Below, in pieces: positions 33,400 through 62,506 of a stretch of 64,000 bases of DNA (its first letter is position 1; every line of letters begins with the position of its first letter). Under the pieces are notes generated by a model that was not told the DNA's origin, searched no databases, and saw only the letters and a list, made by a program, of their open reading frames with translations. The translations under genes were made by a program, and so were the position numbers. The stretch spans positions 171,625 to 235,624 of IMG/VR virus record IMGVR_UViG_3300027844_001828. One strand, 5' to 3'.

Positions 33400-33481
33400 A
33401 AGTATTGGTAATTTCTGTAAACCCTTTTGGTCATTTTCATAAAAGTCTTTACGTATATGACCAAAAGTCTGGAGAGTTGTC

Positions 33482-33515
33482 GGTTCACTGTATAAAACAT
33501 TTTATACAGTGGACC
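33482..33515 (+). repeat. 34-bp 13-8-13 palindrome, copy 1
   Basis: GGTTCACTGTATA-AAACATTT-TATACAGTGGACC; degenerate copies at 33429-33462 and 33548-33581. Confidence 0.95.
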
Positions 33516-33816
33516 GAAACGAGGAAGCGCCTGGTGTACGAAAACGGACGATTTGGTAAAAACACTTTTATACAGTGGACCGGAGGGTTGGCCGTGGAGT
33601 TTTGGTAAGATCTGTAAAATATCCCTTAATAGGTATAAGAGAAAAGAATCTTTCACAGAGTGCTTGTAATGTGAATGTTGGTGGGATATAGTGTTTGCAT
33701 GATAACCAAAACGACAATCAATGGCGACATTGTTCAGATTGAAACAGCAACATAGCAAGGGTGAAGCAGTAGAGTGGCTTGAAAAAGAGAGTGTACTAAC
33801 TTACGGATGGTGAATT

Positions 33817-34059
33817 ATGGATATCAAATATGCCAAATCTGGAAATGTTACATTGACATCTGAGGCTTTCTCTTACCATCCTTTATGGTGGCATGAGAAA
33901 GGGTTACAGGAAACTGCATCTGGGTATGGATCTAAGCTGACTACACCGTACAAGGTGCGGCACAACAATAGATGGAAGAGAGTCTATGCGATTTGCTGGA
34001 GCAATGCGGCAAGCCATTACATCTTCAACAAGGGACAACGTGAATATATTCATGGGTGA
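33817..34059 (+). CDS. Conserved phage hypothetical protein
   Basis: ETASGYGSKLTTPYKV...RVYAICWSNA motif. Confidence 0.65.
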   Translation: MDIKYAKSGNVTLTSEAFSYHPLWWHEKGLQETASGYGSKLTTPYKVRHNNRWKRVYAICWSNAASHYIFNKGQREYIHG

Positions 34060-35001
34060 AATATGAAAATCTCTGAAATACCGAATCTGGACGATCATTC
34101 AATTGATCCAAATGATTACGATAAATTGATCGTAGAGTTTCTTGTAGCAGGACAGTGCCTTCTTAGGCTCTCTAACTACGCTCAAATAAAGGCTGAAAGC
34201 ATAAAGGAAAGAAAAGCAGGGAACATTGAAAAAGCTTTTCTTCTATCTCGTAATATGGAAAATACTTATAATGAATTGCCAGATTGGGCGAGGTGGTGAG
34301 ATGAAAGCAGTAACAGGAGAATTGTGGCAAAATAAATCACCTCTGTCAAGAGTGAATGACAATCTGGTAGAACGATGAATGGGATAGGGGTTCAGCCCCC
34401 CAAGAAAAGATCACACGACACATCACAACGGAGGGTTGAGAGATGACTATCGAACACCCAGAATATTTTTACTATGCAGAGCTGGAAGGCGACTTCTTTC
34501 ATTCGTTTGATTATTATACGGATTTGGTTATCAACATCCACTGCACCTCAATTGAAATCCGTAAAACCTCGATGAAAAGGTACACTTGGCCTTGGCGGAT
34601 GCTCAGGGAGACGCATTGGGAGGCGGTGGAAGACGCCGAGAACCTCCTAAAGAATTATGCCGACGTCCTGTTCCGAAGCCAGCAGAAACCCCACCCTGCC
34701 ATCCCAGACGCAGATGCGGTGAACACCCACATCTTGAAAATGAGGGACGGGGTGTCGTTGCCGTCGCCGGAATACATGCGAGAGTGGATTGGTACTCAAA
34801 CCCTCTACCTGTATGCTGGACCTGGCCAAGTGCATGTGGAACCACTACCCCACGAACAAGGAGACGAGGAATGAGTGAATGACAAGACGATGTGCAGGTT
34901 GCGACTCTGAATCTATATAAGGGATTCTCCGAAGGTGGTCGTCATCGAATGGTTAGTTGATCATGCGACTGAGGTTCAATCCCTGTATCAGACTGCCAAT
35001 C

Positions 35002-35043
35002 TTTCTAATAACGACTTGAAAAGTCAACTTGAGGGGTTAGAGT
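35002..35043 (+). promoter_or_regulatory. Promoter-containing 42-bp direct repeat, copy 1
   Basis: TTTCTAATAACGACTTGAAAAGTCAACTTGAGGGGTTAGAGT; TTGAAA-N16-TAGAGT. Confidence 0.85.
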
Positions 35044-35108
35044 GTTATTATGTCAATAACATACAAAGAACTTGCAGCAACGATTTTGTCCTGGAATCAG
35101 GAATAACG

Positions 35109-36689
35109 ATGAAGATTAAAGTTGGTCACGAGTTCTTCCGCAAAGAGCGGTACTCCGCATACGCTGATTGGAAAACCGCATTCTGGCGGGAACTGGAACA
35201 AAATTCAGATGATGCCAAGTCAAGGCGCGTCGATATCAATATAGTTCCTGATGGGAATGGCTGTATTGTTGGATTCGATGACAACGGCTGTGGTATGAGT
35301 GAGGCTGTCATTCGGGATGTGTTTATGAGTCTTGGTGAGACTACGAAGTCGGGTGATTCTACGGGTGGGTTTGGTCGCGCTCGTATGCTGACTCACTTTT
35401 CAATGCCTAAGTATCAGATCAAATCGGGTTGTATTTATGTGAGCGGCAAGGGATCTGAGTATCAAATCAGGAAAAGTGATAGCTACGTTTTGGGGACGAA
35501 GCAGAAGATATGGATTGATGATGCTTCTATGTCAGACATGGAAATGGCTTTGCATGATTATCTTGGAAAGTGTAATCTTGCCCATGACATCTACGTCAAT
35601 GGTGTACGGTGGAACAAGTGGTTGTACAGGCGTAAGCTTATCAGGGATATGACATTTGGTTCAGTCTACGTGAACAAATCCTCAGACCTTAAAAACACAG
35701 TCGTGTTCAGGGTCAACGGGGTGATGATGTTCACTCGATATACATCGGCAAATGCGTTGGTGGTGATCGAAATCTATCCCAGTATTAGTCGTGATGTGCT
35801 TACTTCTAACCGTGATGGAATTCACTACAAGTATCAAAGCGAACTGGATATATTTCTTAACAAGTTGGCTATCGATACGACTTCGACTCTAAAGCGTAGA
35901 CGGACAAACAAGAGTACTCGCAGACAAGGACAAGGTTGTTTCATCTCCTGTGTAAAGCGGAAGGAATTGTCGGTGATGAAGCGGGATTCTGATCCATCCG
36001 ATTCCTACTCTGGTAACGGTGGCTACACTATGGATACTTCAAGTGATGAAGCCACGATAAAGTCCTTCACAGGTGTGGTTTTTGGTGGCACAAGTCAGGC
36101 AGATTCTGAGCCGATTGCAGCCTTGTACGGTGGTGATGGCTATTATGGATCTGAGTCTGAGTGTATCGCCAAACTCGTAGAATCTGATCCTACTGAGATC
36201 GATATGTATGATGTGGCGATACTTGATGAGTGTCAGGATATAGGACCGGTTAGTAAGGTGATCGAATCATACGATCCTACGAATTGGAGAGACAAGGCTG
36301 GCGGCACGAAAAAGAAGCTCCTGTCTCTGTGGCAGATTGCGGTCAAGCATTCTCTGGATATTCTTCAAGAGGAAAAACCCTCTGATGGTATTCCTTGGAT
36401 CGTTGGGTGGGTATTCGATGATAGTGAAGAGGCAGGGATGAAGGCTGCACACAAGATGTATGACGATACGCATGGGTTCCTTATCAATCCAGTAGGCTTG
36501 GATGGCAAGTTGCAATTCAAGTTGAATCCTGAGGGCAAGTCTTCATTGTTCGCAATCGCCCTACATGAGGTTACTCATGTTTATTGCGAGATGCACAATC
36601 AGGAGTTCTCGTCCCTTCATACTGCACTGACAATCAATGGGATGTCTCGGATCAAGGAAGTTCTCAGAGACATGAAGGAGAATTCATAA
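35109..36689 (+). CDS. GHKL (Hsp90/MORC-like) ATPase with C-terminal HExxH motif
   Basis: RELEQNSDDA, DDNGCGM, GGFGRA, GT; ALHEVTH...HNQEF. Start placed downstream of the promoter. Confidence 0.8.
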   Translation: MKIKVGHEFFRKERYSAYADWKTAFWRELEQNSDDAKSRRVDINIVPDGNGCIVGFDDNGCGMSEAVIRDVFMSLGETTKSGDSTGGFGRARMLTHFSMPKYQIKSGCIYVSGKGSEYQIRKSDSYVLGTKQKIWIDDASMSDMEMALHDYLGKCNLAHDIYVNGVRWNKWLYRRKLIRDMTFGSVYVNKSSDLKNTVVFRVNGVMMFTRYTSANALVVIEIYPSISRDVLTSNRDGIHYKYQSELDIFLNKLAIDTTSTLKRRRTNKSTRRQGQGCFISCVKRKELSVMKRDSDPSDSYSGNGGYTMDTSSDEATIKSFTGVVFGGTSQADSEPIAALYGGDGYYGSESECIAKLVESDPTEIDMYDVAILDECQDIGPVSKVIESYDPTNWRDKAGGTKKKLLSLWQIAVKHSLDILQEEKPSDGIPWIVGWVFDDSEEAGMKAAHKMYDDTHGFLINPVGLDGKLQFKLNPEGKSSLFAIALHEVTHVYCEMHNQEFSSLHTALTINGMSRIKEVLRDMKENS

Positions 36690-37048
36690 TGAGTTGGTAC
36701 ATAGTCGGTGAAGATGGAAAGTGTCAGGCAAAGGAGAATGATTTGCAGATCGCTTTGATGGTGGCTAAGGGAAAGGGATGTCCTTTCATTACGGATGACA
36801 TTAAGTCACCAAAGAAGCAGTGGATCAAGGTGGATGATGTGATTAGTTGCGGGGCATACATCGAAGATGCGGGAGGCGAAGTGAAAAGCGGCGGATTGGA
36901 GGTAGGTACGATGAGTAATTCAACGTTTGATCGATTAGTTCTTATTGGAGCTAAGAGAAAATGGAAAAGTGTTCCTTTGGTGATTACTTTGAGGATCATC
37001 CATAAATGCAGTGGGGGTCATCCACCTTGTGACGAGCAATGAGACTTA

Positions 37049-37090
37049 TTTCTAATAACGACTTGAAAAGTCAACTTGAGGGGTTAGAGT
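37049..37090 (+). promoter_or_regulatory. Promoter-containing 42-bp direct repeat, copy 2
   Basis: Identical to 35002-35043. Confidence 0.85.
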
Positions 37091-37764
37091 AATTGTTATG
37101 AGCGACACAGACCAAGAAGATCAGTACGAGCGTTCGATGAGTGAAGAGAAAGAAACAAAAGGATCAAGCATAACACAATTTGTTTTGATTTTTGTAGCGA
37201 TTATGTTCACCGTATGTATGAGGGTTTCACTCACAACCATAAGTGGACTTCGGGCGAAAGTTAGTGATCTTACGCAAGAAAACATTTCGCTTCGATATGA
37301 TGTTATAGAGCTTCAAGAGTTCTACGAATGCCCACCGGAGATACCATGAAATCAGTTGACAAATTAATTCGCGCTATTGATCGTGGCAAGCTTGTTGTCA
37401 CGGGCCACGATCTTATTTGTGCTGTGAACATTCACGAAGCCAGGATCGAAGTCAAGGTCTATCATGATTACGAGCATGTTCATTTCGATATCTGTTTCGA
37501 GCAACATGCTATTGACATCAACATCGAAGAGACGGATTTTGTTCTTCTCTATCAGACTTCGGCCCGGAATAATGGCCGGGTGTTAGGTCTCGAAGACTTA
37601 AATATTGTTTTGAAACTCGACTTGACAGAAGCGGCCATTGATGCTATAGTGTTTCATTACAAGTCAATCTTGTTACCCGCGACGGGTTTCACTGACGAAC
37701 AGTTAAGTGATATCGTCTCGGCATCTGAGTCACAACATTCGAATAGACAAGAGGTTACAGCCTA

Positions 37765-38553
37765 ATGCCACGGACTAATAAACCCGTCCCGAAGTTTTTA
37801 CTCACCTTGAAATCGTCAAACATCAAAACCGGGCCGATGGCTGTAAGCACTTCTCCAATGGGTACTTGCCCGGACGCCTGCCCTTTCAAGGGTAATGGTT
37901 GCTACGCTGCCTACGGCCCTGTAAAAATCTGGTGGGACGCCTGTACAGCCAATGGTGACGATCCGGTTGAGGCATACACTGAGTTCCTTAGCCGCGTTAC
38001 TGAAAACATTGACAACGATGCATTTTGGAGACATAATCAAGCTGGCGATTTATTTTCATTGAATGGTCGAACGATCAATCAAAAGGCGGCCCGTGCTTTG
38101 ATTGCTGCGAACGAGGGTAAGAAAGGTTATACTTACACTCACTACGGCGTGATCAAACAGCCTTTCACACAGAAGCGTGAGGCAGAGCGGAATCGTAAGA
38201 TTGTTGAAGAAATGAATGCGAGCGGGTTCGCTACGAATGTATCGGCTAACAGCATGGAGCATGCCGATAAGATCAAGGCGAGCGGTATCAAGGCTCCAAT
38301 CGTTACGTTGTTGCCGGAGCGGTACAAACATGACAAGAAAGCTTTCTTGACACCTGGGGGCAATAAGATCGTTGCTTGTCCCGCGATTACACATGACGAC
38401 ATTACTTGTGTGAAGTGTAAGCTTTGCATGCATCCTGAACGTGATATTATCGTGGGGTTTCCATCACATGGTAGTGGTAAACGCCGGGCTGAATCAGTGT
38501 ACACTGAATGGAGTCCGGACGAGATTAAAACAACAGCCAAGGGAAAAATCTAA
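37765..38553 (+). CDS. Cys-rich conserved phage protein (gp88/radical-SAM-like; putative Fe-S or Zn binding)
   Basis: SNIKTG, TCPDACPF...CYA, RHNQAGD, YTYTH, CPA, CVKCKLC, FPSHG. Confidence 0.6.
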   Translation: MPRTNKPVPKFLLTLKSSNIKTGPMAVSTSPMGTCPDACPFKGNGCYAAYGPVKIWWDACTANGDDPVEAYTEFLSRVTENIDNDAFWRHNQAGDLFSLNGRTINQKAARALIAANEGKKGYTYTHYGVIKQPFTQKREAERNRKIVEEMNASGFATNVSANSMEHADKIKASGIKAPIVTLLPERYKHDKKAFLTPGGNKIVACPAITHDDITCVKCKLCMHPERDIIVGFPSHGSGKRRAESVYTEWSPDEIKTTAKGKI

Positions 38554-38925
38554 TGGGAAAGGAACAGAAAGTTATTTTAGAGGGTTCGTATTTAACTATC
38601 TCACACTTGGCTTAGATCATGTCCTTATGAGATGAAACCTGGCGAGACCGATTGTTTCGCTCCTTCTGAGCTTCAAGAGTTTTATGATATCGTATCTAAA
38701 ACTGGGTTTTTTATTTTTCGCGGTTTGGATTTACTTATTTTTTGGTTTTTCAATAATTGTTGTAATCTCTCTTGTGTTATTTACTCTCATTAATGTTTTC
38801 TTTTTAATAGCCTTATTTAATAAGGCGGAATATTTTGATGATTGACTTGACAGGAATGCCCTCAGCGGTTACAGTATGGTTAACTGTAACTGTTAACATA
38901 ACCAACCAGGAGTTGTAAAGCCAAA

Positions 38926-39093
38926 ATGGCGAACAGATCAAAAATCATTAGTAAGTTCAATCAAAAGAACAAAACCCGTCGTGGATTTGACGATGGATAT
39001 TCCGCAAACCGTGAACCGACGAGGAAGAAGAAGCGCAGCAAGCGCATAAAGCCTCCGAAGGAAGACAGTTACGAGAGAAATGGTCGCGACTAA
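38926..39093 (+). CDS. Small basic protein (55 aa, below ORF-track cutoff)
   Basis: Upstream promoter TTGACA-N17-TACAGT and AGGAG; Lys/Arg-rich. Confidence 0.55.
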   Translation: MANRSKIISKFNQKNKTRRGFDDGYSANREPTRKKKRSKRIKPPKEDSYERNGRD

Positions 39094-39434
39094 TTTATAA
39101 CAACTCCTTGACAAAAACTCAACCCGTGCTATGTTGTAGGTATGAAGAACATCAAACAGGTACGGGTAACACTTGAAAAATGATAGTTGCCCTATCAAGA
39201 GAAAGTGTCTAAGGTGGATGGCAAAGCCAGGACTAAATGCAGACGGCGGGTTCGAAGAATGGCTGGCCGATATTTTCGCGAAAGAGGGTATTGATGTTCC
39301 CCATTCTGCCCTCGGAATGGTCAAAGAGCGCATCAAATACTTCGATAATCGGCCCAATCGTCAAAGATCTGAAGCGCCAGTTTAAGGGCTTAGATGTCAT
39401 CAAGGATTATTAATTTAACCAAACAGGAAAGAAG

Positions 39435-39758
39435 ATGAACAACGAAAGAATTGCGAGACAGCTGGTAAAGATTGCCGGTGAGTTAGTAGGAGCAAGTAGA
39501 GCCAAACCCAAGGACAAAAAAAGTCCTTTCGATAATGCAGTCGATAAATATGAAGACATGGTGAAGGACGGGTATAGCCACGCTGATGCTTTGAAACATA
39601 CCAAGAGTTCTTTCCCAGGATTGACAAAGACAGATGAGAAAGATATCTCGAAGGTCAAGAAGCTCTTTGGCGATCACCGACTTACAGCCGAGGGAATTTC
39701 GACAGGCAGAACGGCAGCCAAAATCATCACGGTTGGAAAGTACAAGTTCAAATGGTAA
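39435..39758 (+). CDS. IAxEL-leader family protein
   Basis: MNNERIARQLVKIAGELVGA. Confidence 0.7.
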   Translation: MNNERIARQLVKIAGELVGASRAKPKDKKSPFDNAVDKYEDMVKDGYSHADALKHTKSSFPGLTKTDEKDISKVKKLFGDHRLTAEGISTGRTAAKIITVGKYKFKW

Positions 39759-39950
39759 TGACATTAACTCCAGCGAAGGAAGAGGCATTATGCGAGTTGC
39801 TGTAGGAACAATTAGTCCCATGATCCTTTTCCATATGGCTTGTGTCAATTCAGAGTGAAACATGAGCATGCAACGTTCGTTGGCGAGACTCTCAAGTCTC
39901 TTGATGTTGAGGAATACGAAATTAAAACAATAACCATCGAGGATTGATCC

Positions 39951-40688
39951 ATGGAAAAGCTTTTTCAAGGTACGTTATCTGTCTGGAGTGGTTGCGTTTA
40001 TGCTCAGGCGAGGCCTTTTACTTATGAAGACTTCGAGTTTTTCGATCTTTCTGTTTCAGAGAAAGGGGGAACCAGCAAGTATGCGTCGGTGACAAAGGCC
40101 TTTCGATTGAAACAAGAGGTTCTCGACGAAGTCGTTTCAGAAAGTTGCCTCAGTATTGGCAAGGGCTTCTTCATGGAATGGGATAAGATAAAGAATCATT
40201 ATATTTATGTCACACAAGACATCAAGTATAATGGCTGTCGGACTTTGGCTTCGAAAGTTGCCAAGTATGATAAGGCCTGTGCGGAAGTTATTTATCGCTG
40301 GAATGAGATTGGCGACTCCTTGGTTGAGAAGCGCATCGAAGAAATCAATGAGGACTTTCAAAGGTTGTTGTCCCGGTCTCGTGAGGATTACCTTCAGCGG
40401 TACACTGAATTCCTCTCAAACTTGAGAGGGTACGAGCAATCAGAGTTGATCGAAGAGTCTGGCACAGCTTCTGATATTCTCATGCTTGATGAGATGGGAA
40501 AGGCGGTCATGGCCTTGGAGAGATCAATTAATTCTAGGAAGTACGCTTGTCTTTTAGAATCATTCGAGTTGCCTGATAAGGGCAGCTGGATCAACGAGCT
40601 TCCCACTGAATTGACTGAGCAGGTTATTTTGAACTTGAGAAAAAGTGTTGATAACTCAGTTCCGGAATTCCGAGGAGTTTTGACTTAA
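39951..40688 (+). CDS. Hypothetical protein
   Basis: 245-aa ORF with GGAGG SD. Confidence 0.65.
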   Translation: MEKLFQGTLSVWSGCVYAQARPFTYEDFEFFDLSVSEKGGTSKYASVTKAFRLKQEVLDEVVSESCLSIGKGFFMEWDKIKNHYIYVTQDIKYNGCRTLASKVAKYDKACAEVIYRWNEIGDSLVEKRIEEINEDFQRLLSRSREDYLQRYTEFLSNLRGYEQSELIEESGTASDILMLDEMGKAVMALERSINSRKYACLLESFELPDKGSWINELPTELTEQVILNLRKSVDNSVPEFRGVLT

Positions 40689-41460
40689 GGTGAAAGACCC
40701 CAGGAACATCAGCGAATTTACAAGTAATCGAAAACCCCCTCCTGAACCATCAAGCAAATCTGAAAAAGAATTGTATTGGGCTCAACAGATTGCCGAGATG
40801 TTCTCAGAGAAAGAACAGAAGGACAAGGCGGGTGAAGTCGTAGGTTACTGTATTGAAGAGGGTTACGACTTGCTCGATATATTTCGAGCGTTAGTGGTTC
40901 TTAACTCGGCCTATGAACGTGAGAAGTTAAAAGTATTAAACCTCCAAGAAAAAACTTAGAATGGAGTTGTAAAGATCTTCATTTAACGGTATAGTAATTG
41001 GTGTTAAGGGGCATATTGCCCAGAGGTGAAAAAGCGAACAAGGAGAAGGCTTATGAATATAACTGTGAGACAATTTGCTCAGATCAACAACATGTATCCA
41101 CCTAATTTGGCGGACATGGATTACAAGACCCGTAAGAAGGTAGAGGCCAAGGTGTATGCGAGAGCCTCGGCGGTTGTTAACTATCTCCTTACGATCAATG
41201 CAATCACTGATACTGGCAAGAAAGTGCAGGCACGTGGTGGTATTGGGCGAAGTTCGGTCGTGTACAGCGTACCAGCCGGTGCGATTCATTTGACCTTGGT
41301 TGCAGAAGGCACCGATGTTCCTGAGGATACCCCTTATCCTGAGAAGCCTAAGGCAGAAGAGACCACACCAGAGGTAGATACAAACATGACTACCACTGAG
41401 AATGAAGAATCAACGGAGCCTGTGGAAGCGTCAGCGTAGATCCTGAGAAGTTGTAAGATG

Positions 41461-41496
41461 GTGCTCGTCGGGGAACCCGGCGGGCACTTTCTTTTT
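41461..41496 (+). terminator. Intrinsic terminator
   Basis: GTGCTCGTCGGG-GAA-CCCGGCGGGCAC followed by a T-tract. Confidence 0.8.
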
Positions 41497-54304: not shown

Positions 54305-54362
54305 ATTATCAACGTCAGCAAAAGTTGACAGTAACTGAAACCGCCACCAATGGGAGGCACTT

Positions 54363-55427
54363 ATGAGCGCAGGAATCATACCCGGAGTCGATGCAGGATG
54401 TATTGGCTACAAGGAACATTTCGGGGGTACCTGGCATGGGTTCCCGGAGTACGAAGTTATCGATGGCCCAGTCTCAATGGAACAGACCCGTAAAATTCTT
54501 GAGCATGAAGTTGTCATGAATCCGGTAACGTTGACTGGTGACTTCGAAGGCGAGGAAACCGAGATGTTCGCTCTTGTTCGCAAGGACACTGGCCGCGTCC
54601 TTTACAAAGAGAGCGTGTCGGATGAGTATTACATCACCCAGAACAAGGCGTTTCTCGACCAGCTTCAGTTGCGTATCTTGACCCCAAACCCGCAAGTTTC
54701 AATCGAATCCACCGGTACGCTCTTCGCCTTCCGCGTCGGTTTCGTGAACTTGCTTCTCAATCGGTTCCGTGTCAATGGTGATGACAGTGAGACAATCGCT
54801 CGTCTCATGTACTACAATGCGTTCGGTGGTCGCAGCATTACAGCTGGCGCACACACCACTCGTATCGAATGTGCCAACACGATGAACATGGCCGAAGCGC
54901 AAGCTTACGCTAACGCAACGATCAAGAAGTTCAAGCATACAAAGAATGCTGAGAAACGTCTTGCTGACCACCTCGTTGACTTGGGCGAGATGTATTCGCT
55001 CATGGAAACGCACAAGGACGCACTCAACTGGCTTTCTTCGCAGACTATCAACTCAACGGAAGTTCAGCGGTTCGTTGGTAACCTCTTCGCCCTCCCAGCC
55101 AAGGCTTCGAAGACGATGATCAGTCGGCGAACCAGAGAGCGGGGCGAACTCTTGCAACACTTCGAGGACTGTGACAATCTTCAGGGTGCGATTGCGAGGA
55201 CTCGATTTTCCATGCTTCAGGCTGTTATCTGGTACGCGAACAACAACAATATCCGTGGGGATAGTGACATGGCGTATTCGTACTTCAATACGGTTTCCGG
55301 CGGGACACGTGATGCCTTGAATCAGCAGGCGTTCAGGCTCTTGACTTGTCAAGACATCCCGCTCCCAGTCGTTGACATCACTGAACCGGAAACGGCGGGT
55401 GAGACGGAACTTGCTCCCGCAGAGTAA
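54363..55427 (+). CDS. DUF932 (TIGR03299-like) protein
   Basis: WHG, VSDEY..TQN, ESTGTL, RIECANT, KHT. Confidence 0.75.
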   Translation: MSAGIIPGVDAGCIGYKEHFGGTWHGFPEYEVIDGPVSMEQTRKILEHEVVMNPVTLTGDFEGEETEMFALVRKDTGRVLYKESVSDEYYITQNKAFLDQLQLRILTPNPQVSIESTGTLFAFRVGFVNLLLNRFRVNGDDSETIARLMYYNAFGGRSITAGAHTTRIECANTMNMAEAQAYANATIKKFKHTKNAEKRLADHLVDLGEMYSLMETHKDALNWLSSQTINSTEVQRFVGNLFALPAKASKTMISRRTRERGELLQHFEDCDNLQGAIARTRFSMLQAVIWYANNNNIRGDSDMAYSYFNTVSGGTRDALNQQAFRLLTCQDIPLPVVDITEPETAGETELAPAE

Positions 55428-55812
55428 CGTCCACTGAATGCGCACACGGGGGAGGGGTTTCCTCCCCCATTAACATCTGAGGTAAAATTATGAGTCGTAA
55501 TTAGATTCATGTATCAAGTACAGACAGTTTTTTTGGCAGAGCGAGATCGACAGGTATCTTTTTGGTGGTTACACAGTTGTCCCACAAACAACTACGATTG
55601 TTATTTCTGGTGAAAAGAAGTTCTTCAGTATGTTCATGAATCCACCGAAGGAACGCGAGGGTGATTCGATCACTGATGAAGATTAAAAGAAATTTCACAA
55701 TACGGTTTGTATTTAATTCGATGCGTGTCATATTGTGATTGTTAAGGCCGAATGTGGGGTTTGCCACCACAAAATAAACACCAAACATGTTCAAGCAATG
55801 GAGAACACCAGC

Positions 55813-56178
55813 ATGAGCGAGAATCAAAACGAGAATGAATGTGCCGATGGTGCCGAGACTCAGGTGCCGACAACGAATCAGCGTGGCCGGGCGAAGGGTT
55901 CCGTGACTGCCGCTCAGAAGGAATCGATGCAGAATGGCCGTATCGCTGCTGGCAAGCGCAAGGCAGCGGCGATCAAGGTCATCGAGAAGAACGATGCCTT
56001 CACGAAGGCTTCGACTTGGCGCAACGTTGACCCGACCATTACGGCGGCGATCATCGACGCGGCAACCGAAGGCGGAGCAAAGGCGCAGGACAAGCAGGAT
56101 GCGGCTCGTGCCGTGGCTCAGTCCCGCATTAACGCCATCGACGCTGAACGGGCGCAGTTGGTTGCAGACCTCGGCTAA
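55813..56178 (+). CDS. Ala-rich hypothetical protein, probably highly expressed
   Basis: GGAG SD; GC-rich codons; own promoter and terminator. Confidence 0.65.
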   Translation: MSENQNENECADGAETQVPTTNQRGRAKGSVTAAQKESMQNGRIAAGKRKAAAIKVIEKNDAFTKASTWRNVDPTITAAIIDAATEGGAKAQDKQDAARAVAQSRINAIDAERAQLVADLG

Positions 56179-56206
56179 GACAGCCGAACGTCGAATATTA
56201 GTAAAG

Positions 56207-56238
56207 AAAAGCCCCACCGGGAAACTGGTGGGGCTTTT
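56207..56238 (+). terminator. Intrinsic terminator preceding palindrome
   Basis: AAAAGCCCCACCGG-GAAA-CTGGTGGGGCTTTT. Confidence 0.85.
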
Positions 56239-56297
56239 CTGTTTTCCCGGCTCGCCGATCTTTACCCCCTTGGCGAGACCTCCTGGTGACCTCGGCT

Positions 56298-56331
56298 GGC
56301 TCACTGTATAAAACATTTTATACAGTGGACC
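56298..56331 (+). repeat. 34-bp palindrome, copy 5
   Basis: GGCTCACTGTATA-AAACATTT-TATACAGTGGACC. Confidence 0.95.
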
Positions 56332-56424
56332 AAAACGGGTGGTCTCGATCAGACCAGGGCTGACCTCTCATATTTCTTTTCAAGAACAGCTTGCAATGTT
56401 GAAGATGCGATCTATATTGTTGAT

Positions 56425-56571
56425 GTGTATAGCACAAGCTACCTCACAGGGGTGAGGGGAAATGCATCAATCGGAGAAAACGGTTGAAGTGCAGGAGGGA
56501 TTCTACTCCTTTAAGTACAGGTATGAGCTGCGTTTTTGCGAAGTATCAGTGGCTTGAATCCTGTTACATAC
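56425..56571 (+). ncRNA. Candidate multibranch, possibly pseudoknotted RNA directly after a promoter
   Basis: CAAGCTAC/GTGGCTTG closing stem, 3-4 hairpins, loop GGATTC complementary to GAATCC. Confidence 0.5.
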
Positions 56572-57680
56572 TAACTTAACAAGGGGGATGAGATGAATGA
56601 TGGGAATAAAAATCTCAAACTTGATCTAATGCTTCTGGGCAACAAGCTCGTGACTGAGTATGGATACCCGACGGGGAATCAGATGATCGGATCGTCATGG
56701 TTCCTGAATGCAGTGAACAATTTTACAGAAGCTTTGAACGAGGCACCACCAGAGGTGCTGGAACTCCTGTCAGAATTTGGTTACGATTGGCCTGTTGTTG
56801 AAAAATGAAATAGGAGAAACAGAGGTAGCGTAGATGGAAATTAATAAAAAACGAATCAGGGTGACCTACGAGATTATCACACCTGAGTCTTCTGCCAACG
56901 GAGATGTTGCAGAGAGTGGGTGGCTCGATGAGGGGGGTAGAGACTTCCGTCTACCTCTTTGTCCGAGTAGCCCTGAAGGAGATACCCCAGTTGCTTTCGC
57001 TATTGATCACCTGAGATGTGAGGGAGCAACCAGTGATGGGGGTAGTGAATGGTTGACTGCCTACGGGGATATGGAAACTGACGGTAGCGTGACCAATACA
57101 TCCTTCCACCTTGTCGAAGGTGAGTGGACTGACGAGGAAATTGATGAAATTCATAGAGCTTTGTCGCCAGCACCATATAACGCAGCAGCATATGCTGCCA
57201 AAATGAGAAATAAAAAATGAAAAAGACCATCGATTACTACACAGAGATGTGCGTTGACGGAAGTGGACGAGTAGTTCTGATGCGGGAAGATAGCGATAAC
57301 TATGTAGAGGAAGTGACCATCGTTGAAGGGACGAAATACTCCTCTGGCTATAGCGTGACAGCAATGGATGTTCAGGCAGCTATCACACAGGACATCATGC
57401 GAAACTGTGTCAGGGTAGATTACCGACTGTCCCCTGACGTAGACAAGGGCGACAATAGGACTACTCGATACGAGACTCCCCAGTACGCCAATTGTGAGCC
57501 TGTATTACCTTCCCGTAAATAAAAAAAACAGGAGAAACCAGATGAGTAATGAGTTTCCCCTTGCAATAGTTAGGTGAAGAGAGAGAAACCTAACAAGGAG
57601 GAAACGATGTTTAAGTCAGAGTTTGCAATCAAGGCACTGATTCTCGTGTGTGGTCACCCAACTAACTAAGGAAAGGAACA

Positions 57681-57980
57681 ATGAACAATCAAGTGATAGC
57701 TAATGAATTGGTGGCAGGGTCAACGGCAAAAGGGCTTTTCGATGCTATTATGATGGATATAATGCCACGGGCATCTGTCACTGTCGATTTTGGTATCGAT
57801 TCAAAGAAGCACTATGAAGCTTTATATTATCCTATTAGGTCAGGCGAGATTGATTTACAAGATTTAGAGAGAGTGGTGGGAGATGGTCCTGCTATTACGG
57901 ATCTCGTGAGAAAGAGCAAGGGAAATCCTCATCGGAACATCACATTTACAACCAGCTATGATGGCAAGTATGGACAATAA
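57681..57980 (+). CDS. IAxEL-leader family protein (short leader)
   Basis: MNNQVIANELVAG. Confidence 0.7.
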   Translation: MNNQVIANELVAGSTAKGLFDAIMMDIMPRASVTVDFGIDSKKHYEALYYPIRSGEIDLQDLERVVGDGPAITDLVRKSKGNPHRNITFTTSYDGKYGQ

Positions 57981-58299
57981 TAAAATAGCTAATGAACTTC
58001 TGAAAGTGGCTGAAAGCCTGATCGCTGGGAGAGGTTTCACCAAACAGCGCACAGAACCACTTCCGGATGTGAACGGGGTGTGGCGAAAGGTTTGGTTCAA
58101 CTACCACCCTGATGGAACTATGGAGATTCAACTCTCTTCAACGGCAAAGATCGAGTTTGGGTTCAGTACCTATGTGGACAGAGATTGGGGGATTTGGGAT
58201 ACGAATCAATTGGATGACCTTTACAAAAACATTCGGAATGGCAAGATGCCAAGAGGATTCGTCCACACAGAGGGTGCCAAGTTCATACCTGAACAATGA
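57970..58299 (+). CDS. IAxEL-leader family protein
   Basis: MDNNKIANELLKVAESLIAG. Confidence 0.75.
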   Translation: MDNNKIANELLKVAESLIAGRGFTKQRTEPLPDVNGVWRKVWFNYHPDGTMEIQLSSTAKIEFGFSTYVDRDWGIWDTNQLDDLYKNIRNGKMPRGFVHTEGAKFIPEQ

Positions 58300-58682
58300 A
58301 TCAGAAAATAGCATCTGAGTTAGTGGATATGGCTGAGAGGGTCGCTGCAAATAAAACTCTCTTGGATTATGATGGGGATGATGCAGAAATAGCTGATGAC
58401 TTGGAAGCGGCATTGAGTTATTTTCTTGGCGGTTCTTCAGAGGTGAACAAGACTGAGATCATTTTCTATGAAGAAGAAACACGAAAGGGTGAATCAGTTC
58501 AGATATCGGTAACGGTGGAAAATCAATGGCGGAATCTTTTAGTCGGTCTCTACATCACAGGGGAAAATGGTGATGGACCCACATACGAGGACGGTATGTG
58601 GAGCTTTGATATCACCGATTCGGTTCGAGAAGTTGCCAAAACCATTGGACAAGCTGCTCAAAAAGTACTCAAAAAGTTCTAA
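58296..58682 (+). CDS. IAxEL-leader family protein
   Basis: MNQKIASELVDMAERVAAN. Confidence 0.75.
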   Translation: MNQKIASELVDMAERVAANKTLLDYDGDDAEIADDLEAALSYFLGGSSEVNKTEIIFYEEETRKGESVQISVTVENQWRNLLVGLYITGENGDGPTYEDGMWSFDITDSVREVAKTIGQAAQKVLKKF

Positions 58683-58697
58683 ACAAGGAGAGAAACA

Positions 58698-58883
58698 ATG
58701 AATCAAAAAATAGCAAGTGAGATGGTGGAGAAGGTTGTGAATAGGGTTGCTGCTGGTGTAGCTTCCGAGGCGGGATTGTATCACAGGTTTACAGGCACAA
58801 TTAGTGTAAAAAACGCAATTTTTGAACTAAAGAGAGACGGAAAAATAGATTGGAAAAAAGGAACTTGGGTAGCTGGAAAGTAG
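58698..58883 (+). CDS. IAxEL-leader family protein
   Basis: AAGGAG SD; MNQKIASEMVEKVVNRVAAG. Confidence 0.7.
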   Translation: MNQKIASEMVEKVVNRVAAGVASEAGLYHRFTGTISVKNAIFELKRDGKIDWKKGTWVAGK

Positions 58884-59489
58884 CGCAGTAGAACCACACT
58901 TTAACGAGCGTCTTGGAATCAAAACTAACTAAGGAAAGGACAATGGACAATCTATCGTTATCCGATATCAAGAAGGCAATTCAAGCAGTTAAAAGAGACA
59001 AGTGGCGTGATGATAGGACCATCATGAGTATTGTTGAAATATTCTTAGCATAGTTTGTAATAACTAAAAATGAGGTTAGAGTAAGAACATGAGTCAACCA
59101 TATTCAATTTTCATTCTCCATGACAATGGTACATGGGAACAACCAACGTTTTGTGTTGAGAACGGAGACCGCCTTTCTTTGGATGAAATTGAGAAATGCG
59201 CACAAAACCAGTTCGGCGGGTTTCTTAGCTATGGCCTTCAATCAGATGATGACGCCCCCGAAGAGAATATCTGTGAAATCCCTAACCCCATTAACAAGAA
59301 GGCGTAACATGGAATCCGATATTATCAATATCCTTACCGAGCTCCTTCAATATTATGGGCCGGAGCACGGTGTCACGAACACTTCAATGGTCGGCACAGA
59401 TTGTTCTGTCGCCTTCGATTTTTCCGGGAAGTCATTTCTTATAAGCTCTAACGATATAAATTTGATCGATGAACTGGTAAATTAGCGAC

Positions 59490-60578
59490 ATGCAAATTGG
59501 CGTTCCAAAAGAAATTAAAAACAACGAGTTCAGGGTTGGGCTAACTCCTGCTTCAGTAGCTGAATTAATTGCTAACAATCATTCCGTCTTTGTTGAACAT
59601 AATGCTGGCAAAGAAATTGGCTTCTCTGATAACGATTACTCTTTAGCAGGAGCAAATATTCTTGAAACTGCTGCCGAAGTCTTCAATGCTGCCGAGCTTA
59701 TTATTAAGGTTAAGGAGCCCATGCAAGAAGAATTGCAATTTCTATCCGCTCGCCACACTCTTTTTACTTACTTGCACTTAGCTGGTGATAAGAAGCATGC
59801 TGCTAATCTAATTAAAACTGGTGTTACAGGCATTGCTTATGAAACTGTTACTTCAGCTAATGGCTCTTTGCCATTGCTTGCGCCAATGAGTGCTATTGCT
59901 GGTCAACTCAGCATAGTGGTTGGCTCCTATCATCTGTTAAAACCAAATAAAGGCAGGGGAACTTTAATTGGATCTTTTGGAGAAATTGATCCAAGAGTTG
60001 TTACTGTTATTGGAGCAGGCGTGGCTGGTACTGAGGCCATTGAAAAAGCAATTAGAAACAATGCTCACGTTAAAATTATTGATTTATCTAAAGAGAGATT
60101 GGCTGAGTTAGAAGTAATTCATGGAACTGACCGCATTGAATACATTGAATCCACCGACGCTGCGATTGTCGAGGCTTTATCACAATCTGACTTGGTTGTT
60201 GGCGCTGTTTATGTTGTTGGCAAACAAGCTCCAAAAATCGTAACAGAGAAAATGCTTGCCAAGATGACCCCAGGAAGTGTGATGGTTGATATTTCAATTG
60301 ATCAAGGCGGATGCTTTGAGACAAGCCGACCAACGAATCATGATGAGCCTACTTTTATTAAAGATGGAGTCGTGCATTATTGTGTTACTAACATGCCCGC
60401 CGCAGTTCCCTTGACGGCGACCCACGCATTGAATAAAGCAACCTTACCTTTTGTGATAGACCTAGCAAACAAAGGTATAGATCAAGCATTAAAAGATGAC
60501 GAACATCTTTTAAATGGATTGAATATAAAAAATGGTGAAGTTGTTCATCCTGCTGTAAAAGAAGCCTTGCTAGGCTAA
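59490..60578 (+). CDS. ald: Alanine dehydrogenase
   Basis: IGVPKEIKNNEFRVGLTP, KVKEP, FTYLHLA, LPLLAPMS, GAGVAG, IDQGGCFETS, HYCVTNMP. Confidence 0.96.
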   Translation: MQIGVPKEIKNNEFRVGLTPASVAELIANNHSVFVEHNAGKEIGFSDNDYSLAGANILETAAEVFNAAELIIKVKEPMQEELQFLSARHTLFTYLHLAGDKKHAANLIKTGVTGIAYETVTSANGSLPLLAPMSAIAGQLSIVVGSYHLLKPNKGRGTLIGSFGEIDPRVVTVIGAGVAGTEAIEKAIRNNAHVKIIDLSKERLAELEVIHGTDRIEYIESTDAAIVEALSQSDLVVGAVYVVGKQAPKIVTEKMLAKMTPGSVMVDISIDQGGCFETSRPTNHDEPTFIKDGVVHYCVTNMPAAVPLTATHALNKATLPFVIDLANKGIDQALKDDEHLLNGLNIKNGEVVHPAVKEALLG

Positions 60579-62380
60579 ATCGTCAATAGCGACTTAGTGC
60601 GCGGGTTCGAGCAGTGTTGGCAGGTATTTGACGGTGACCTATCGAAGTGCATGGCGGTGACTGAATTGATACTTGCCGGTGGCTTTTACGGCATTCGGAC
60701 TGCGGATTACTGCGGCGATAATGGTGACGGGTTCTCGTCTGAGTTTATCATCGACTCCACCGACGTGGACGGACTGAAAGCGATCTATAAACAGTACAAA
60801 GCGAGGGCAACACGATGAGCACGATGCAAATTACGACAATCCCAACATCACCAACTATGCCGAATCGGTATAGGTAACGCCCGTGGGTAGTGTGTTGCAG
60901 CAGCAGGTCTACCTGTCTGCATCCTACGATGCCGCAATGAGCGAGTACCGCGACCGACTGAACAAGTAACCACAACCGCAACGGCGCGCCAGATAACAGA
61001 GAGGAATGAACATGGAAACCCACCACGCATACTACACGCACGACGAACACGACAAGTGGACGCTGATACACCAAGGCCTGCCATGCAATGCACCCCGCGA
61101 TCTCGCAACGTGCCGCAAGCTGGCGAAGCGTTACGGGCTGGAAGTCACGCACGTATGGCTGGCCGAGGACGGAAAGTTCGCGCCGCTAACACAAGTCGGA
61201 GAGGATGGGCTTGTCGAGCGGTGCGTTGACTGCAACGGCACGAACATCGAAGAACAAACCTGTAACGATTGCTTAACTGAGGCGCTAACATGACACGCGA
61301 ACCATCAATCACAATACGCAAGACAAACCGCAAACGCGATATTTTTTTCTTTCAGTGCATTTGTTAGCTCTAAGTTAGGGTTGGCCCCCATGCATGGAGA
61401 GGTTTATGGCTATGGTTCAATGTGCGCACCGTCGCCAACAGCCTTCGCCAAGGATTGTGATTACATTGCGAAGTGGAGGGATATCCTCCGGGGCGAATAC
61501 TCCAGGCTTGACGGTGTGATCATCAGTGATGGTGACTACCGCACTGGGAATATCTTCGTTGTTTTCTTCAAGCCTGCTTGACAAATGACTTGCACTGAGT
61601 AATGTACACGCATGCGTAACATACACGAAATCAATGGAGTTAATATTATGGCAACAATAAAAAATCCCGGAGGCACATCGAATTTACAGGGTAGAGAGAA
61701 CAGTATTCGAAGTCTCTCATTAGTCAATGCCAGAATATGTGGAGATAGTTCAGATGGAATCGTCTCAAAGAGGTGTGATTGCAAGTACCTCAACCCTGGA
61801 GATGTGCTTACGAGTTGCCAGACTGGTTGTAGCGAGCTTCGGACAGTCATTTTCATGTTGGAAAACATGACAGAGGAGGAGTATCAATTAGCCTTGTCTG
61901 TTGGAGCCGAACGCCTTAGAGGTTCCGAAAGAAAAGCCCGGCTCGATAGGTTGCGGGACAAGCTCGATGATGTAGACATTCGTACTTTACAGTCAGAAGG
62001 GCTTGATATCTAAGATTCAGGAGTCATTGTAACACCATGAATCACACACTGACAGCCAAGGAACAATCATGACGCGACATGGAACATGTTATTGGAAGAA
62101 CTTCAACTGTGCTCAAATTTATTATCATGATCAAGGCCATGATGATTATGAGATCAACGACAAACTATATCGTCGTGAGATCATTTGCAATGAGGAGCCC
62201 AAGTGCAACACTGCTGCCGGAGAGATCATCAACGTGGATGAATATGGTCGCTACCTGATATTTGTCCCTGACACGCCTCCTGCGCCAGCCAAGCCGGAAC
62301 CCAAAGCGTTCAATTTGATCATTGGACATTCACGGGAATTGATGTCGTCATAAGTTCTTGGCAGGGTGGCGTTTACATAG

Positions 62381-62408
62381 AGAGCCTCATCGGAAACGGT
62401 GGGGCTTT
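62381..62408 (+). terminator. Intrinsic terminator preceding palindrome
   Basis: GAGCCTCATCG-GAAA-CGGTGGGGCTTT. Confidence 0.7.
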
Positions 62409-62472
62409 CGTGTGTCCAGAGGAAGGGAGAATCCGAGGCTCTGCCTCTCCATCGCTCGATTGGGCCTCTGTC

Positions 62473-62506
62473 GGCTCACTGTATAAAACATTTTATACAG
62501 TGGACC
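62473..62506 (+). repeat. 34-bp palindrome, copy 6
   Basis: GGCTCACTGTATA-AAACATTT-TATACAGTGGACC. Confidence 0.95.

What the first reader, a model, noticed from the sequence alone, without database searches (positions are those of the whole stretch)
33429..62506. Dispersed, polarised 34-bp loxP-shaped palindrome marking gene-cassette boundaries
Seen: six near-identical 34-mers GGYTCACTGTATA-[8]-TATACAGTGGACC at 33482, 42451, 52644, 52747, 56298 and 62473, plus degenerate copies at 33429 and 33548. All are intergenic and in the same orientation: the right arm is invariant, the left arm varies, and (G/A)AAACG follows four copies. None was seen in the first 33 kb. At 52.6, 56.3 and 62.5 kb the layout is terminator, GC-rich non-coding flank, palindrome, GC-rich flank, promoter; the 42.4 kb copy also has GC-rich flanks and a downstream promoter. 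Established: P1 loxP is 13-8-13 with GTATA/TATAC bordering the spacer, the same inner bases as here. Inference: either recombination sites that shuffle or excise early-gene cassettes, or binding sites for a dimeric protein (partition, genome organisation, staged DNA entry, replication). No recombinase is visible in this window.
Basis: partly seen in the sequence, partly recalled or inferred. Interest (0 to 1): 0.9.

Follow-up and report, generated by a model that had tools for sequence, protein, structure and literature searches.

The report
Conserved palindromic sites between phage operons
A giant ocean phage carries at least 32 copies of one 34-bp palindrome in the gaps between the small operons of a 70-kb gene island, and they look like binding sites for one still-unidentified regulatory protein, not like loxP-type recombination sites.

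Summary
Six full 34-mers, one half-site and one degenerate copy lie at the stated coordinates, where chance predicts none.

The description needs correcting. The motif is GGnnCACTGTATAAAAnnTTTTATACAGTGnnCC, a 16-2-16 palindrome. It is not 13-8-13, because the "spacer" is itself conserved and palindromic. The window is the end of a 235-kb jumbo-phage contig. Overlapping contigs show the sites continue to at least 32 copies. They fill one 70-kb island of higher GC and stop at both island edges.

Twenty-eight of the 34 positions are almost invariant, and three dinucleotides vary without keeping base pairs. That pattern points to sequence-specific recognition of duplex DNA, not to a hairpin.

Most sites lie about 50 nt after an intrinsic terminator and 45-108 nt before a sigma-70-type promoter. 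A relative sharing about 45-66% protein identity has a variant of the site at four orthologous positions. A distant relative has a related palindrome with the core in the same register.

I found no recombinase, and no strain rearrangement falls at a site.

Best reading: operators for a lineage-specific dimeric protein that controls or insulates the island's operons. The protein and its effect are unknown.

The parts
33429..33462 (.). Degenerate relic copy at the left edge of the island
   Evidence: It matches 16 of the 28 constrained positions. Only 9 windows in the 64 kb reach exactly 16.
33482..33515 (.). Full 34-bp palindrome, centre CA; the first full site of the island
33548..33581 (.). 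Half-site with an intact right half and a lost left half
   Evidence: Right half 14/14, left half 6/14.
42451..42484 (.). Full palindrome, centre AC
52644..52677 (.). Palindrome with one core change (G9 to T), centre TG; first of a twin pair 103 bp apart
52747..52780 (.). Full palindrome, centre CA; second of the twin pair
   Evidence: The orthologous site in the relative is L089:8311.
56298..56331 (.). Full palindrome, centre CA
   Evidence: The left arm is GGTCCAC, a perfect arm match, in strain variants L019 and L020. The ortholog is L089:11895. The site plus 66 nt downstream is 95% identical to the module at composite-path position 90863.
62473..62506 (.). Full palindrome, centre CA
   Evidence: The ortholog is L089:15827. 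Its immediate flanks are the same as those of the tandem-array units on unplaced contigs.
52560..52595 (+). Intrinsic terminator about 48 nt upstream of site 52644
   Evidence: GC-rich hairpin plus T-run read. Not listed by the terminator scan.
56207..56245 (+). Intrinsic terminator about 52 nt upstream of site 56298
   Evidence: Sequence read. Not listed by the terminator scan.
62383..62415 (+). Intrinsic terminator about 57 nt upstream of site 62473
   Evidence: Sequence read. Not listed by the terminator scan.
33664..33692 (+). Sigma-70-like promoter (TTGTAA-17-TATAGT) downstream of the boundary cluster
42535..42562 (+). Sigma-70-like promoter (TTGTAA-16-TATTGT), 50 nt after site 42451
52856..52883 (+). 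Sigma-70-like promoter (TTGACA-16-TAGAGT), 75 nt after site 52747
56391..56418 (+). Promoter (TTGCAA-16-TATATT) with a TTTCTTTTCAA upstream element, 59 nt after site 56298
62557..62584 (+). Promoter (TTGTAC-16-TAGATT), 50 nt after site 62473
33429..64000 (+). Window part of the 70-kb higher-GC island of small co-oriented genes. The island holds every site and continues about 39 kb past the window end.
   Evidence: GC profile. Composite path and 32 sites. Right boundary: a degenerate site followed by a helicase gene in L078.

Best explanation
The palindromes are cis-acting binding sites (operators) for one two-fold symmetric, sequence-specific DNA-binding protein. That protein is specific to this phage lineage and is most likely phage-encoded.

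Each site belongs to a conserved module between operons: intrinsic terminator, about 50 nt of GC-rich spacer, palindrome, 45-108 nt of GC-rich spacer, then an A/T-rich upstream element and a sigma-70-type promoter. At least 32 such sites punctuate a 70-kb island of small accessory genes that are probably early genes read by the host RNA polymerase.

Binding of a single protein at all sites would let the phage control the whole island together. The most likely effect is to silence or insulate the operons, by action at a distance or as a roadblock behind leaky terminators. Activation is less likely.

Shown: the anatomy, distribution, conservation and co-evolution of the sites.
Inferred: that a protein binds them, that the phage encodes it, and what the regulatory outcome is.
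For: 1. Non-random and specific. No matches occur in shuffles. No bacterial or archaeal species representative carries the site with its outer arms, and none has more than one inner-core match. Only this phage has multiple copies in IMG/VR.
2. Conservation pattern. Over the 32 copies of this phage, the 28 constrained positions show at most 3 departures each, most of them none. Positions 3-4, 17-18 and 31-32 vary.
3. No hairpin selection. Pairs 3-32 and 4-31 are unpaired in 16/30 and 12/30 distinct sequences, and covariation does not exceed shuffles.
4. Purifying selection. Paralogous cassettes that are 77% identical overall keep the core intact.
5. Constant placement. All 32 sites fall in gaps between called genes or likely ORFs. 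Where a terminator is recognisable, its T-run ends about 42-62 nt before the site. A promoter -35 follows 45-108 nt after the site at 22 or more of 32 sites.
6. Association with the promoter. Homology between paralogous 'site + spacer + promoter' modules starts exactly at the left edge of the site.
7. Positional conservation with concerted change. Relative L089 has GGTCTACTGTATAAAAACTTTTATAGAGTAGACC at four positions orthologous to window 52.7, 56.3 and 62.5 kb and to 65.7 kb just past the window end.
8. A distant relative. L091 has GCCCCCyACTTTATmACT-TG/CA-AGTkATAAAGTGGGGGGC in the same terminator-palindrome-promoter layout, with CACTkTAT at the same distance from the dyad.
9. Domain restriction. 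The sites fill exactly the 70-kb island and degrade at both edges.
Against: - No binding protein has been identified. No HTH, ParB or recombinase family appears among the 25 Pfam families listed for 100 island ORFs, or among the larger window ORFs.
- The one nearby candidate is a 181-aa dual-HTH protein flanked by tandem arrays of the site. It lies on short unplaced contigs, and its homologues in the relative's sample and in paralogous cassettes lack the palindrome.
- Sites centred roughly 100-150 bp upstream of the start point, with no fixed helical phase, are unusual for a classical repressor or activator.
- Only about half of the island's promoter-like sites have a palindrome upstream.
- Twenty-eight fixed positions is far more information than a typical operator needs.
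- There are no expression or binding data.
Confidence: 0.5

Rival explanations
1. The sites organise a domain, or act as enhancers or origins, and are not simple operators. A protein bound at the 32 or more sites would bridge or spread. That could structure the 70-kb island as one unit, as matS/MatP, parS/ParB or OB/KorB do. It could also enhance early transcription and seed replication, as baculovirus hr palindromes bound by IE1 do.
For: The sites are confined to a single 70-kb domain with degenerate copies at both edges. Site density rises along the island from one per 3-10 kb to one per 0.5-1.8 kb. Twin sites lie 90-103 bp apart, and tandem arrays with 50-128 bp spacing exist on unplaced contigs. 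Distance to the promoter varies with no phasing. An AT-rich non-coding stretch with six direct YACTGAATG repeats, which share CACTG with the half-site, lies just left of the island.
Against: No ParB, MatP or Rep-like protein was detected. The site resembles neither parS nor matS; that comparison is from memory and was not tested. Nothing bears on replication. The site stays within about 110 nt of a promoter at 22 or more of 32 sites, which fits a promoter-linked role better.
Confidence: 0.2
2. The sites are site-specific recombination sites, of the tyrosine type (loxP-like) or the serine type with a 2-bp crossover. Such sites would excise, invert or shuffle gene cassettes.
For: The site is a long palindrome whose only internal asymmetry is a central dinucleotide. 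That dinucleotide is never palindromic in 32 of 32 sites. The sites lie at boundaries between operons. A copy of the 62473 site with its flanks has been amplified into arrays at another locus. Some paralogous cassettes begin within 15 bp of a site.
Against: The supposed 8-bp spacer is conserved and palindromic, unlike loxP or FRT. No recombinase domain was found in the window or among 100 island ORFs. None of the seven strain-level indels lies at a site; they are 258-2589 bp away. The sites are positionally stable across lineages, while gene content changes inside the intervals. Many direct repeats share the same centre (10 CA, 12 AC), so an active recombinase would delete the island.
Confidence: 0.07
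3. The site is a structural DNA element with no dedicated protein. A cruciform extrudes from the AT-rich centre, clamped by the GC-rich flanks. It would absorb transcription-driven negative supercoils upstream of strong promoters or act as a topological insulator, much like a gyrase or REP site.
For: The site is a near-perfect inverted repeat with an AT-rich centre and GC-rich flanks, and it lies upstream of strong promoters. A GHKL-ATPase gene (34935-36689) lies at the start of the island.
Against: A purely structural role would keep pairing, not sequence. Here the sequence is fixed and the variable positions do not covary. All four sites in L089 carry a G-G mismatch at pair 9-26 in the middle of the would-be stem.
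Confidence: 0.08
4. The site acts as an RNA hairpin in read-through transcripts, as a processing, stability or termination signal, or it is a small mobile palindromic element of the REP or MITE kind.
For: The + strand folds into a stable hairpin with z-scores of -2.7 to -6.1. In the window, the left-arm TT variant would give a G-U wobble only on the + strand. Site modules with identical flanks occur at two loci.
Against: The site lies after canonical terminators and before promoters, so transcription across it is probably low. No U-run follows it. There is no covariation, and the relative has a mid-stem mismatch. No host-genome copies or RAYT-like gene were seen. Orthologous positions conserved at about 45-66% protein identity argue against recent mobility.
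Confidence: 0.06

Closest known systems
Stoperators of Cluster A mycobacteriophages (L5/Bxb1 repressor sites; PMC9283540, PMC6550527), and other dispersed phage operators such as P1 C1 operators and phiC31 conserved inverted repeats (these two cited from memory)
   Same: Many near-identical copies of one site are scattered through intergenic DNA of a phage genome. One protein is presumed to control many transcription units. The sites co-evolve with the lineage.
   Different: Stoperators are 13-bp asymmetric sites bound by a monomer. They are oriented with transcription and lie inside transcribed regions, where they stop elongation. The sites here are 34-bp palindromes in the gap between a terminator and the next promoter, confined to one 70-kb island of a jumbo phage. 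No repressor gene and no evidence of temperate growth was found.
PeSLs, the promoter-early stem-loop cassettes of T4-type phages (PMC2839356, PMC4122927)
   Same: Both are repeated regulatory cassettes with sigma-70-like promoters and terminators that flank small non-essential ORFs in a hyperplastic region. Here too, 'site + spacer + promoter' modules are paralogous among loci.
   Different: In a PeSL the stem-loop is the terminator, and its sequence is loosely conserved (GN-loop-CN). Here a separate canonical terminator is present, and the 34-bp palindrome is an extra element with 28 fixed positions. PeSL-mediated exchanges distinguish close strains, whereas the strain indels here are not at the sites.
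loxP/Cre and FRT/Flp (13-8-13 tyrosine-recombinase sites)
   Same: The total length is 34 bp, with inverted 13-mers ending in GTATA/TATAC next to the centre.
   Different: The central 8 bp are conserved and palindromic except for 2 bp. No recombinase was found, and no rearrangements were found at the sites.
Gammaproteobacterial LexA (SOS) box CTGT-N8-ACAG (cited from memory)
   Same: The half-site CACTGTATA closely resembles the LexA half-site TACTGTATAT.
   Different: The spacing is CTGT-N14-ACAG, six bp longer. The site carries further conserved outer GG/CC and inner A4/T4 blocks. No species representative has more than one inner-core match or any match with the outer arms.
Domain-restricted or dispersed palindromes bound by organising or regulatory proteins: matS/MatP, parS/ParB, OB/KorB of RK2, and baculovirus hr/IE1 (cited from memory)
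   Same: Identical palindromes are dispersed over a defined genomic domain, sometimes in pairs or arrays, at variable distance from promoters.
   Different: There is no sequence similarity, and no cognate protein family was detected. The scale (70 kb of a phage genome) and the strict terminator-site-promoter placement also differ.

Membership tests
loxP/FRT-type tyrosine-recombinase site | Two 13-bp inverted arms around an asymmetric, non-palindromic 6-8-bp spacer where strand exchange occurs | tested here: not met
   The central 8 bp are AAAnnTTT in all copies. Only the middle 2 bp vary, so the element is a 16-2-16 palindrome.
loxP/FRT-type tyrosine-recombinase site | A cognate recombinase encoded by the element | tested here: inconclusive
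   No integrase or recombinase Pfam family was found in window ORFs of 150 aa or more, or among the 25 families listed for 100 island ORFs. The first 171 kb of the contig and the rest of the genome could not be annotated.
loxP/FRT-type tyrosine-recombinase site | Rearrangements (deletions, inversions, circles) with junctions at the sites | tested here: not met
   The seven strain-level indels lie 258-2589 bp from any site. Sites are positionally conserved in relative L089. Read-level junctions could not be examined.
LexA/SOS box (Gammaproteobacteria) | CTGT-N8-ACAG spacing in a 16-20-bp palindrome | tested here: not met
   The spacing is CTGT-N14-ACAG in every copy.
Intrinsic (Rho-independent) terminator | A GC-rich hairpin followed directly by a U-run | tested here: not met
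   No T-run follows any site, and the call-18/19 terminator scans list nothing at any of the six window sites. Hairpin-plus-T-run terminators read by eye lie 42-62 nt upstream; the scans did not list these either.
Structured RNA or DNA hairpin element under selection for pairing | Base pairs maintained by compensatory changes | tested here: not met
   Covariation is no better than shuffles (141-327 of 500 shuffles reach the observed values). Pairs 3-32 and 4-31 are unpaired in 16/30 and 12/30 sequences. Pair 9-26 is broken in all L089 sites.
Dispersed phage operator or stoperator system | Many copies of one specific site in intergenic DNA of a single phage genome, co-varying between lineages | tested here: met
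   There are 32 copies in this phage. A lineage-specific variant lies at orthologous positions in L089. A related palindrome occurs in L091.
Dispersed phage operator or stoperator system | An identified cognate DNA-binding repressor | tested here: inconclusive
   None was recognised. The dual-HTH protein next to the arrays is a weak candidate.
Dispersed phage operator or stoperator system | Sites overlap promoters or lie inside transcription units, so that binding blocks initiation or elongation | tested here: not met
   The sites lie between a terminator and the next promoter, ending 45-108 nt upstream of the -35.
PeSL regulatory cassette | A sigma-70-like early promoter coupled to a terminator stem-loop, repeated in a hyperplastic region | tested here: met
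   The promoter class TTGCAA-16-TAGATT with an upstream element, and intrinsic terminators, recur through the island. Modules are paralogous.
PeSL regulatory cassette | The repeated stem-loop is the terminator itself, and recombination between cassettes accounts for differences between close strains | tested here: not met
   The palindrome is separate from the terminator. Strain differences are not at the sites.
REP/BIME elements with a RAYT transposase | An imperfect GC-rich palindrome in many copies in the host genome, with a RAYT gene flanked by REPs | tested here: not met
   No genome among 185,579 species representatives has more than one inner-core match, and none has the outer arms. No HUH or RAYT family was listed for the island ORFs.
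Integron attC | Conserved R''/R' boxes (RYYYAAC...GTTRRRY), structure conserved but sequence not, and an IntI integrase | tested here: not met
   The ends are GGnnCAC...GTGnnCC. The sequence is conserved but the structure is not. No integrase was found. The attC box consensus is quoted from memory.

The most novel reading that the evidence does not exclude
A jumbo phage marks a 70-kb accessory-gene island with 32 or more copies of a 34-bp palindrome. An unknown phage protein binds these to run the island as one chromatin-like domain: silencing, insulating or activating dozens of host-polymerase operons together. The same protein might also read the related direct repeats (YACTGAATG) clustered at the island's edge as an origin or control region. 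That would be a bacteriophage counterpart of baculovirus hr/IE1 or of matS/MatP-type domain organisers, with a DNA-binding protein from no recognisable family.
Probability: 0.18. Interest if true: 0.8.

Novelty: new variant of a known kind. Interest (0 to 1): 0.58.

Why it matters
Giant phages carry large islands of small, fast-evolving genes, and how those islands are regulated is essentially unknown. This island has an unusually clear cis-regulatory grammar: terminator, palindrome, promoter. It is repeated 32 or more times and conserved across lineages that share only about 45-66% protein identity.

That makes one question directly testable: how does a large phage switch a whole accessory region on or off? 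The 34-mer can serve as bait to find the protein. The way the site changes between lineages gives a built-in specificity test.

If the protein proves to be a tight, orthogonal binder of a 34-bp site, it could also be useful as a tool. If the sites turn out to be ordinary operators, the result still documents a dispersed operator system in a jumbo phage; I know of no earlier report, but searched the literature only briefly.

Tried and rejected
- **Host operator.** An exact inner-core scan of 185,579 species genomes gave 14 single hits, all without the outer arms. Rejected.
- **Isolated phages.** Megablast and a short-query blastn found only a weak single match in a T5-like Salmonella phage. The small-gene terminal-repeat region of XacN1, the closest isolate, has no recurrent palindrome.
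- **IMG/VR.** Scans with the strict core, the L089 variant and the generalised core CACTKTAT-N10-ATAMAGTG found multiple copies only in this phage.
- **DUF932 as the binding protein.** Its gene is bracketed by sites in all three lineages. A fourth DUF932 context (L093) has no palindrome. A good AlphaFold model (pLDDT 80.6) matches no solved fold. There was no sequence hit in the PDB and no functional literature. No conclusion.
- **The 181-aa dual-HTH protein flanked by site arrays.** It occurs only on contigs of 5.3 kb or less and could not be placed in the genome. Its 69% homologue from the relative's sample and its 59% paralogue have no palindrome nearby. Weak candidate only.
- **The 230-aa protein after the twin sites.** The protein atlas gave nothing useful.
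- **Extended stems in the flanks.** Folding showed some flank pairing at three of six sites, which is not general.
- **Fixed phasing to promoters.** Not found.
- **Rfam.** Only the two tRNAs matched.

Full report
**1. The observation**

The right-arm 13-mer TATACAGTGGACC occurs 13 times within two mismatches, against 0.9 expected. The full 34-mer pattern occurs at 33482, 42451, 52644, 52747, 56298 and 62473, with none in 100 shuffles. A perfect right half lies at 33548-33581 and a weak relic at 33429-33462, matching 20 and 16 of the 28 constrained positions. The first 33 kb holds no copy.

The terminator, flank, palindrome, flank, promoter layout at 52.6, 56.3 and 62.5 kb is also correct.

The shape was misread. 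The eight "spacer" bases are AAAnnTTT in every copy, so the element is a 16-2-16 palindrome and not 13-8-13.

**2. Where the window lies, and how far the feature extends**

The window is the last 64 kb of a 235,624-bp JGI and IMG/VR contig, Ga0209501_10000013. The phage is a jumbo phage distantly related to Xanthomonas phages XacN1 and Xoo-sp13, with 48% amino-acid identity on one ORF. It is abundant as near-identical strains in many marine metagenomes.

Overlapping contigs are 99.5-100% identical. I tiled them into a 103-kb composite path that keeps window coordinates. The path carries 32 sites between 33482 and 103336. Spacing shrinks from 3-10 kb in the window to 0.5-1.8 kb further right.

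The last site is degenerate. Right after it, GC falls from about 0.48 to about 0.39 and large genes begin, starting with a ResIII helicase. GC is also about 0.38-0.40 to the left of 33.4 kb. The sites therefore fill exactly one 70-kb island of higher GC. Its small genes are nearly all on the + strand.

Scans of IMG/VR found no further copies elsewhere in the 235-kb contig.

**3. Anatomy of the site**

The 32 copies give GG nn CACTGTATAAAA nn TTTTATACAGTG nn CC. The 28 constrained positions show at most three departures each, and most show none.

- Positions 3-4 and 31-32 vary on both arms. The "invariant right arm" therefore holds only inside the window.
- They do not covary as base pairs. Pairs 3-32 and 4-31 are unpaired in 16/30 and 12/30 distinct sequences.
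- No covariation measure exceeds the shuffles.
- The central dinucleotide always has one A/T and one G/C: CA, AC, TG, GT, AG, CT or GA. It is never palindromic and never a homodinucleotide, in 32 of 32 sites. I cannot explain this rule.
- The flanks weakly extend the symmetry, with CCTCGnTT on the left and AAnCGAGG on the right.

Fixed sequence blocks separated by free dinucleotides, with no selection for pairing, are what a protein reading duplex DNA would produce. A hairpin would not give this pattern.

**4. Context**

Most sites lie between transcription units.

- Where an intrinsic terminator is recognisable, its T-run ends 42-62 nt before the site.
- At 22 or more of the 32 sites, a promoter of one conserved class follows 45-108 nt after the site. 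The commonest distance is 50-61 nt, and there is no helical phasing. The class has a TTTCTTTTCAA upstream element, a TTGCAA -35 box, a 16-nt spacer and a TAGATT -10 box.
- About half of the island's promoter-like sites have a palindrome upstream.

A self-comparison of the island shows that "site + spacer + promoter" modules are paralogous. The module at 56298 is 95% identical to the one at 90863 and 78% identical to the one at 82685. The homology begins exactly at the left edge of the site. A whole cassette duplicated at 77% identity keeps the site core intact. That indicates purifying selection on the core.

**5. Relatives**

- **L089.** This contig has a DUF932 protein 66% identical to the one here and is syntenic with 46-67 kb. 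Its four sites read GGTCTACTGTATAAAAACTTTTATAGAGTAGACC. They lie at positions orthologous to 52644/52747, 56298, 62473 and 65701/65794. The C5-to-T change is mirrored on the other arm. The C26-to-G change is not, which would put a G-G mismatch in the middle of a hairpin.
- **L091.** This distant contig shares only DUF932, at 43% identity. It has three copies of GCCCCCyACTTTATmACT-TG/CA-AGTkATAAAGTGGGGGGC. CACTkTAT lies at the same distance from the dyad, the centre again holds one A/T and one G/C, and the terminator-palindrome-promoter layout is the same.

The sites are old, stay in place and change in concert within each genome. That points to a lineage-specific factor acting on them in trans.

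Between this phage and L089, gene content changes inside the intervals while the sites remain. Among near-identical strains, the seven indels found lie 258-2589 bp from the nearest site.

**6. The search for the protein and for a recombinase**

- Pfam found no recombinase, ParB or HTH protein among window ORFs of 150 aa or more.
- None appears among the 25 families listed for 100 island ORFs.
- Tandem arrays of the site, with 50-128 bp spacing, occur on short unplaced contigs of GC about 0.54. They lie between repeated cassettes that encode a 181-aa protein with two HTH domains and a 349- to 431-aa unknown protein. The array units share their immediate flanks with the 62473 site.
- The homologous cassette from the relative's sample has different repeats and no palindrome. 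Neither does a 59% paralogue. The link to the HTH protein is therefore weak.
- DUF932 is bracketed by sites in all three lineages. It has no known function, no matching solved fold and no palindromes in a fourth context.

**7. Interpretation**

The best-supported reading is a dispersed operator. A two-fold symmetric protein specific to the lineage would bind it, and each site is part of a conserved module between operons. This would let the phage regulate the island's host-polymerase operons together. Silencing or insulation seems the most likely outcome, but that is inference only.

Rivals are listed with their tests:
- a domain-organising or hr-like enhancer or origin role
- site-specific recombination
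- a protein-free cruciform or topological element
- an RNA hairpin or mobile palindromic element

The recombination model loses on the spacer, on the lack of a recombinase, on the lack of rearrangements at the sites and on their positional stability. It is not excluded, because most of the genome was not annotated.

**8. Comparison with known systems**

The closest precedents are the dispersed operators of temperate phages, notably stoperators (PMC9283540, PMC6550527), and the PeSL promoter-terminator cassettes of T4-type hyperplastic regions (PMC2839356, PMC4122927).

This element differs from both. It is a long palindrome with 28 fixed positions, separate from the terminator, upstream of promoters and not inside transcripts, and confined to one island of a jumbo phage.

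It is not a LexA box, because the spacing is N14 and not N8. It is not an intrinsic terminator and not a loxP-type site.

I class it as a new variant of a known kind. It is real, conserved and experimentally approachable, but its protein and function are unknown.

Noticed in passing
window 31962-32613, also 38502, 41512, 51614, 51645, 55432; L089:5465, 7433, 7464, 11040; L091:2941, 6582, 7846: A second over-represented motif, YACTGAATG, is strictly strand-polar and often reads aACAtsCACTGAATG. The window has 12 copies against 1.4 expected. The composite path has 21 on the + strand and 1 on the - strand. Six copies cluster in an AT-rich non-coding stretch of about 800 bp just left of the island. 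The motif is conserved at orthologous positions in both relatives. It could be a phage-specific promoter or an iteron-like element, and it shares CACTG with the palindrome half-site.
   Followed up: partly
60-nt flanks of all 32 sites (for example window 56258-56297 and 52600-52643): CCTC/CCTCC words are about four times enriched on the + strand next to the sites (8.5 per kb against 2.2 per kb), whereas GAGG is not. CCWGG is about three times enriched. The same words recur in the flanks in L089 and L091. This is unexplained.
   Followed up: partly
L040, L049, L062, L065, L071-L077 (contigs of 5.3 kb or less, GC about 0.54): Tandem arrays of the palindrome, with 50, 55, 71 or 128 bp spacing, separate repeated cassettes. 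Each cassette encodes a 181-aa dual-HTH protein (an excisionase-type HTH plus a TerS-like HTH) and a 349- to 431-aa unknown protein. The HTH family has at least 15 diverged members, all on short contigs. The region never assembles, and its place in the genome is unknown.
   Followed up: partly
window 9228-10670 (+): This ORF encodes a phage poly(ADP-ribose) polymerase-like protein with WGR, PARP regulatory and PARP catalytic domains (Pfam E = 1.6e-28).
   Followed up: no
window 1878-3851 (+) and 17046-18065 (+): The first ORF encodes an FtsH-like protein with an AAA domain and an M41 peptidase domain. The second encodes a separate AAA ATPase.
   Followed up: no
window 34935-36689 (+): A 584-aa GHKL-type ATPase, weakly similar to MutL, MORC and HATPase_c_3, lies in the first operon of the island, about 1.4 kb downstream of the boundary cluster of sites.
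   Followed up: no
window 59490-60578 (+) and 60877-60904: An alanine dehydrogenase gene lies inside the island. Directly downstream is a strain-variable insertion point where one strain carries about 380 extra bases. Several assemblies break there, but it is not at a palindrome.
   Followed up: partly
central dinucleotide of every site (for example window 33498-33499): The two central bases are always one A/T plus one G/C, in 32 of 32 sites here, 4 of 4 in L089, 3 of 3 in L091 and in all array copies. They are never AT, TA, CG, GC, AA, TT, CC or GG. No explanation was found.
   Followed up: partly
window 43846-43920 and 46549-46624: tRNA-Arg(TCT) and tRNA-Met(CAT) genes lie inside the island.
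   Followed up: no
window 30000-32000: The + strand shows a strong A-over-T skew (0.37) in the 2 kb before the non-coding repeat region. A 33-bp tandem repeat lies at 30887-30959.
   Followed up: no
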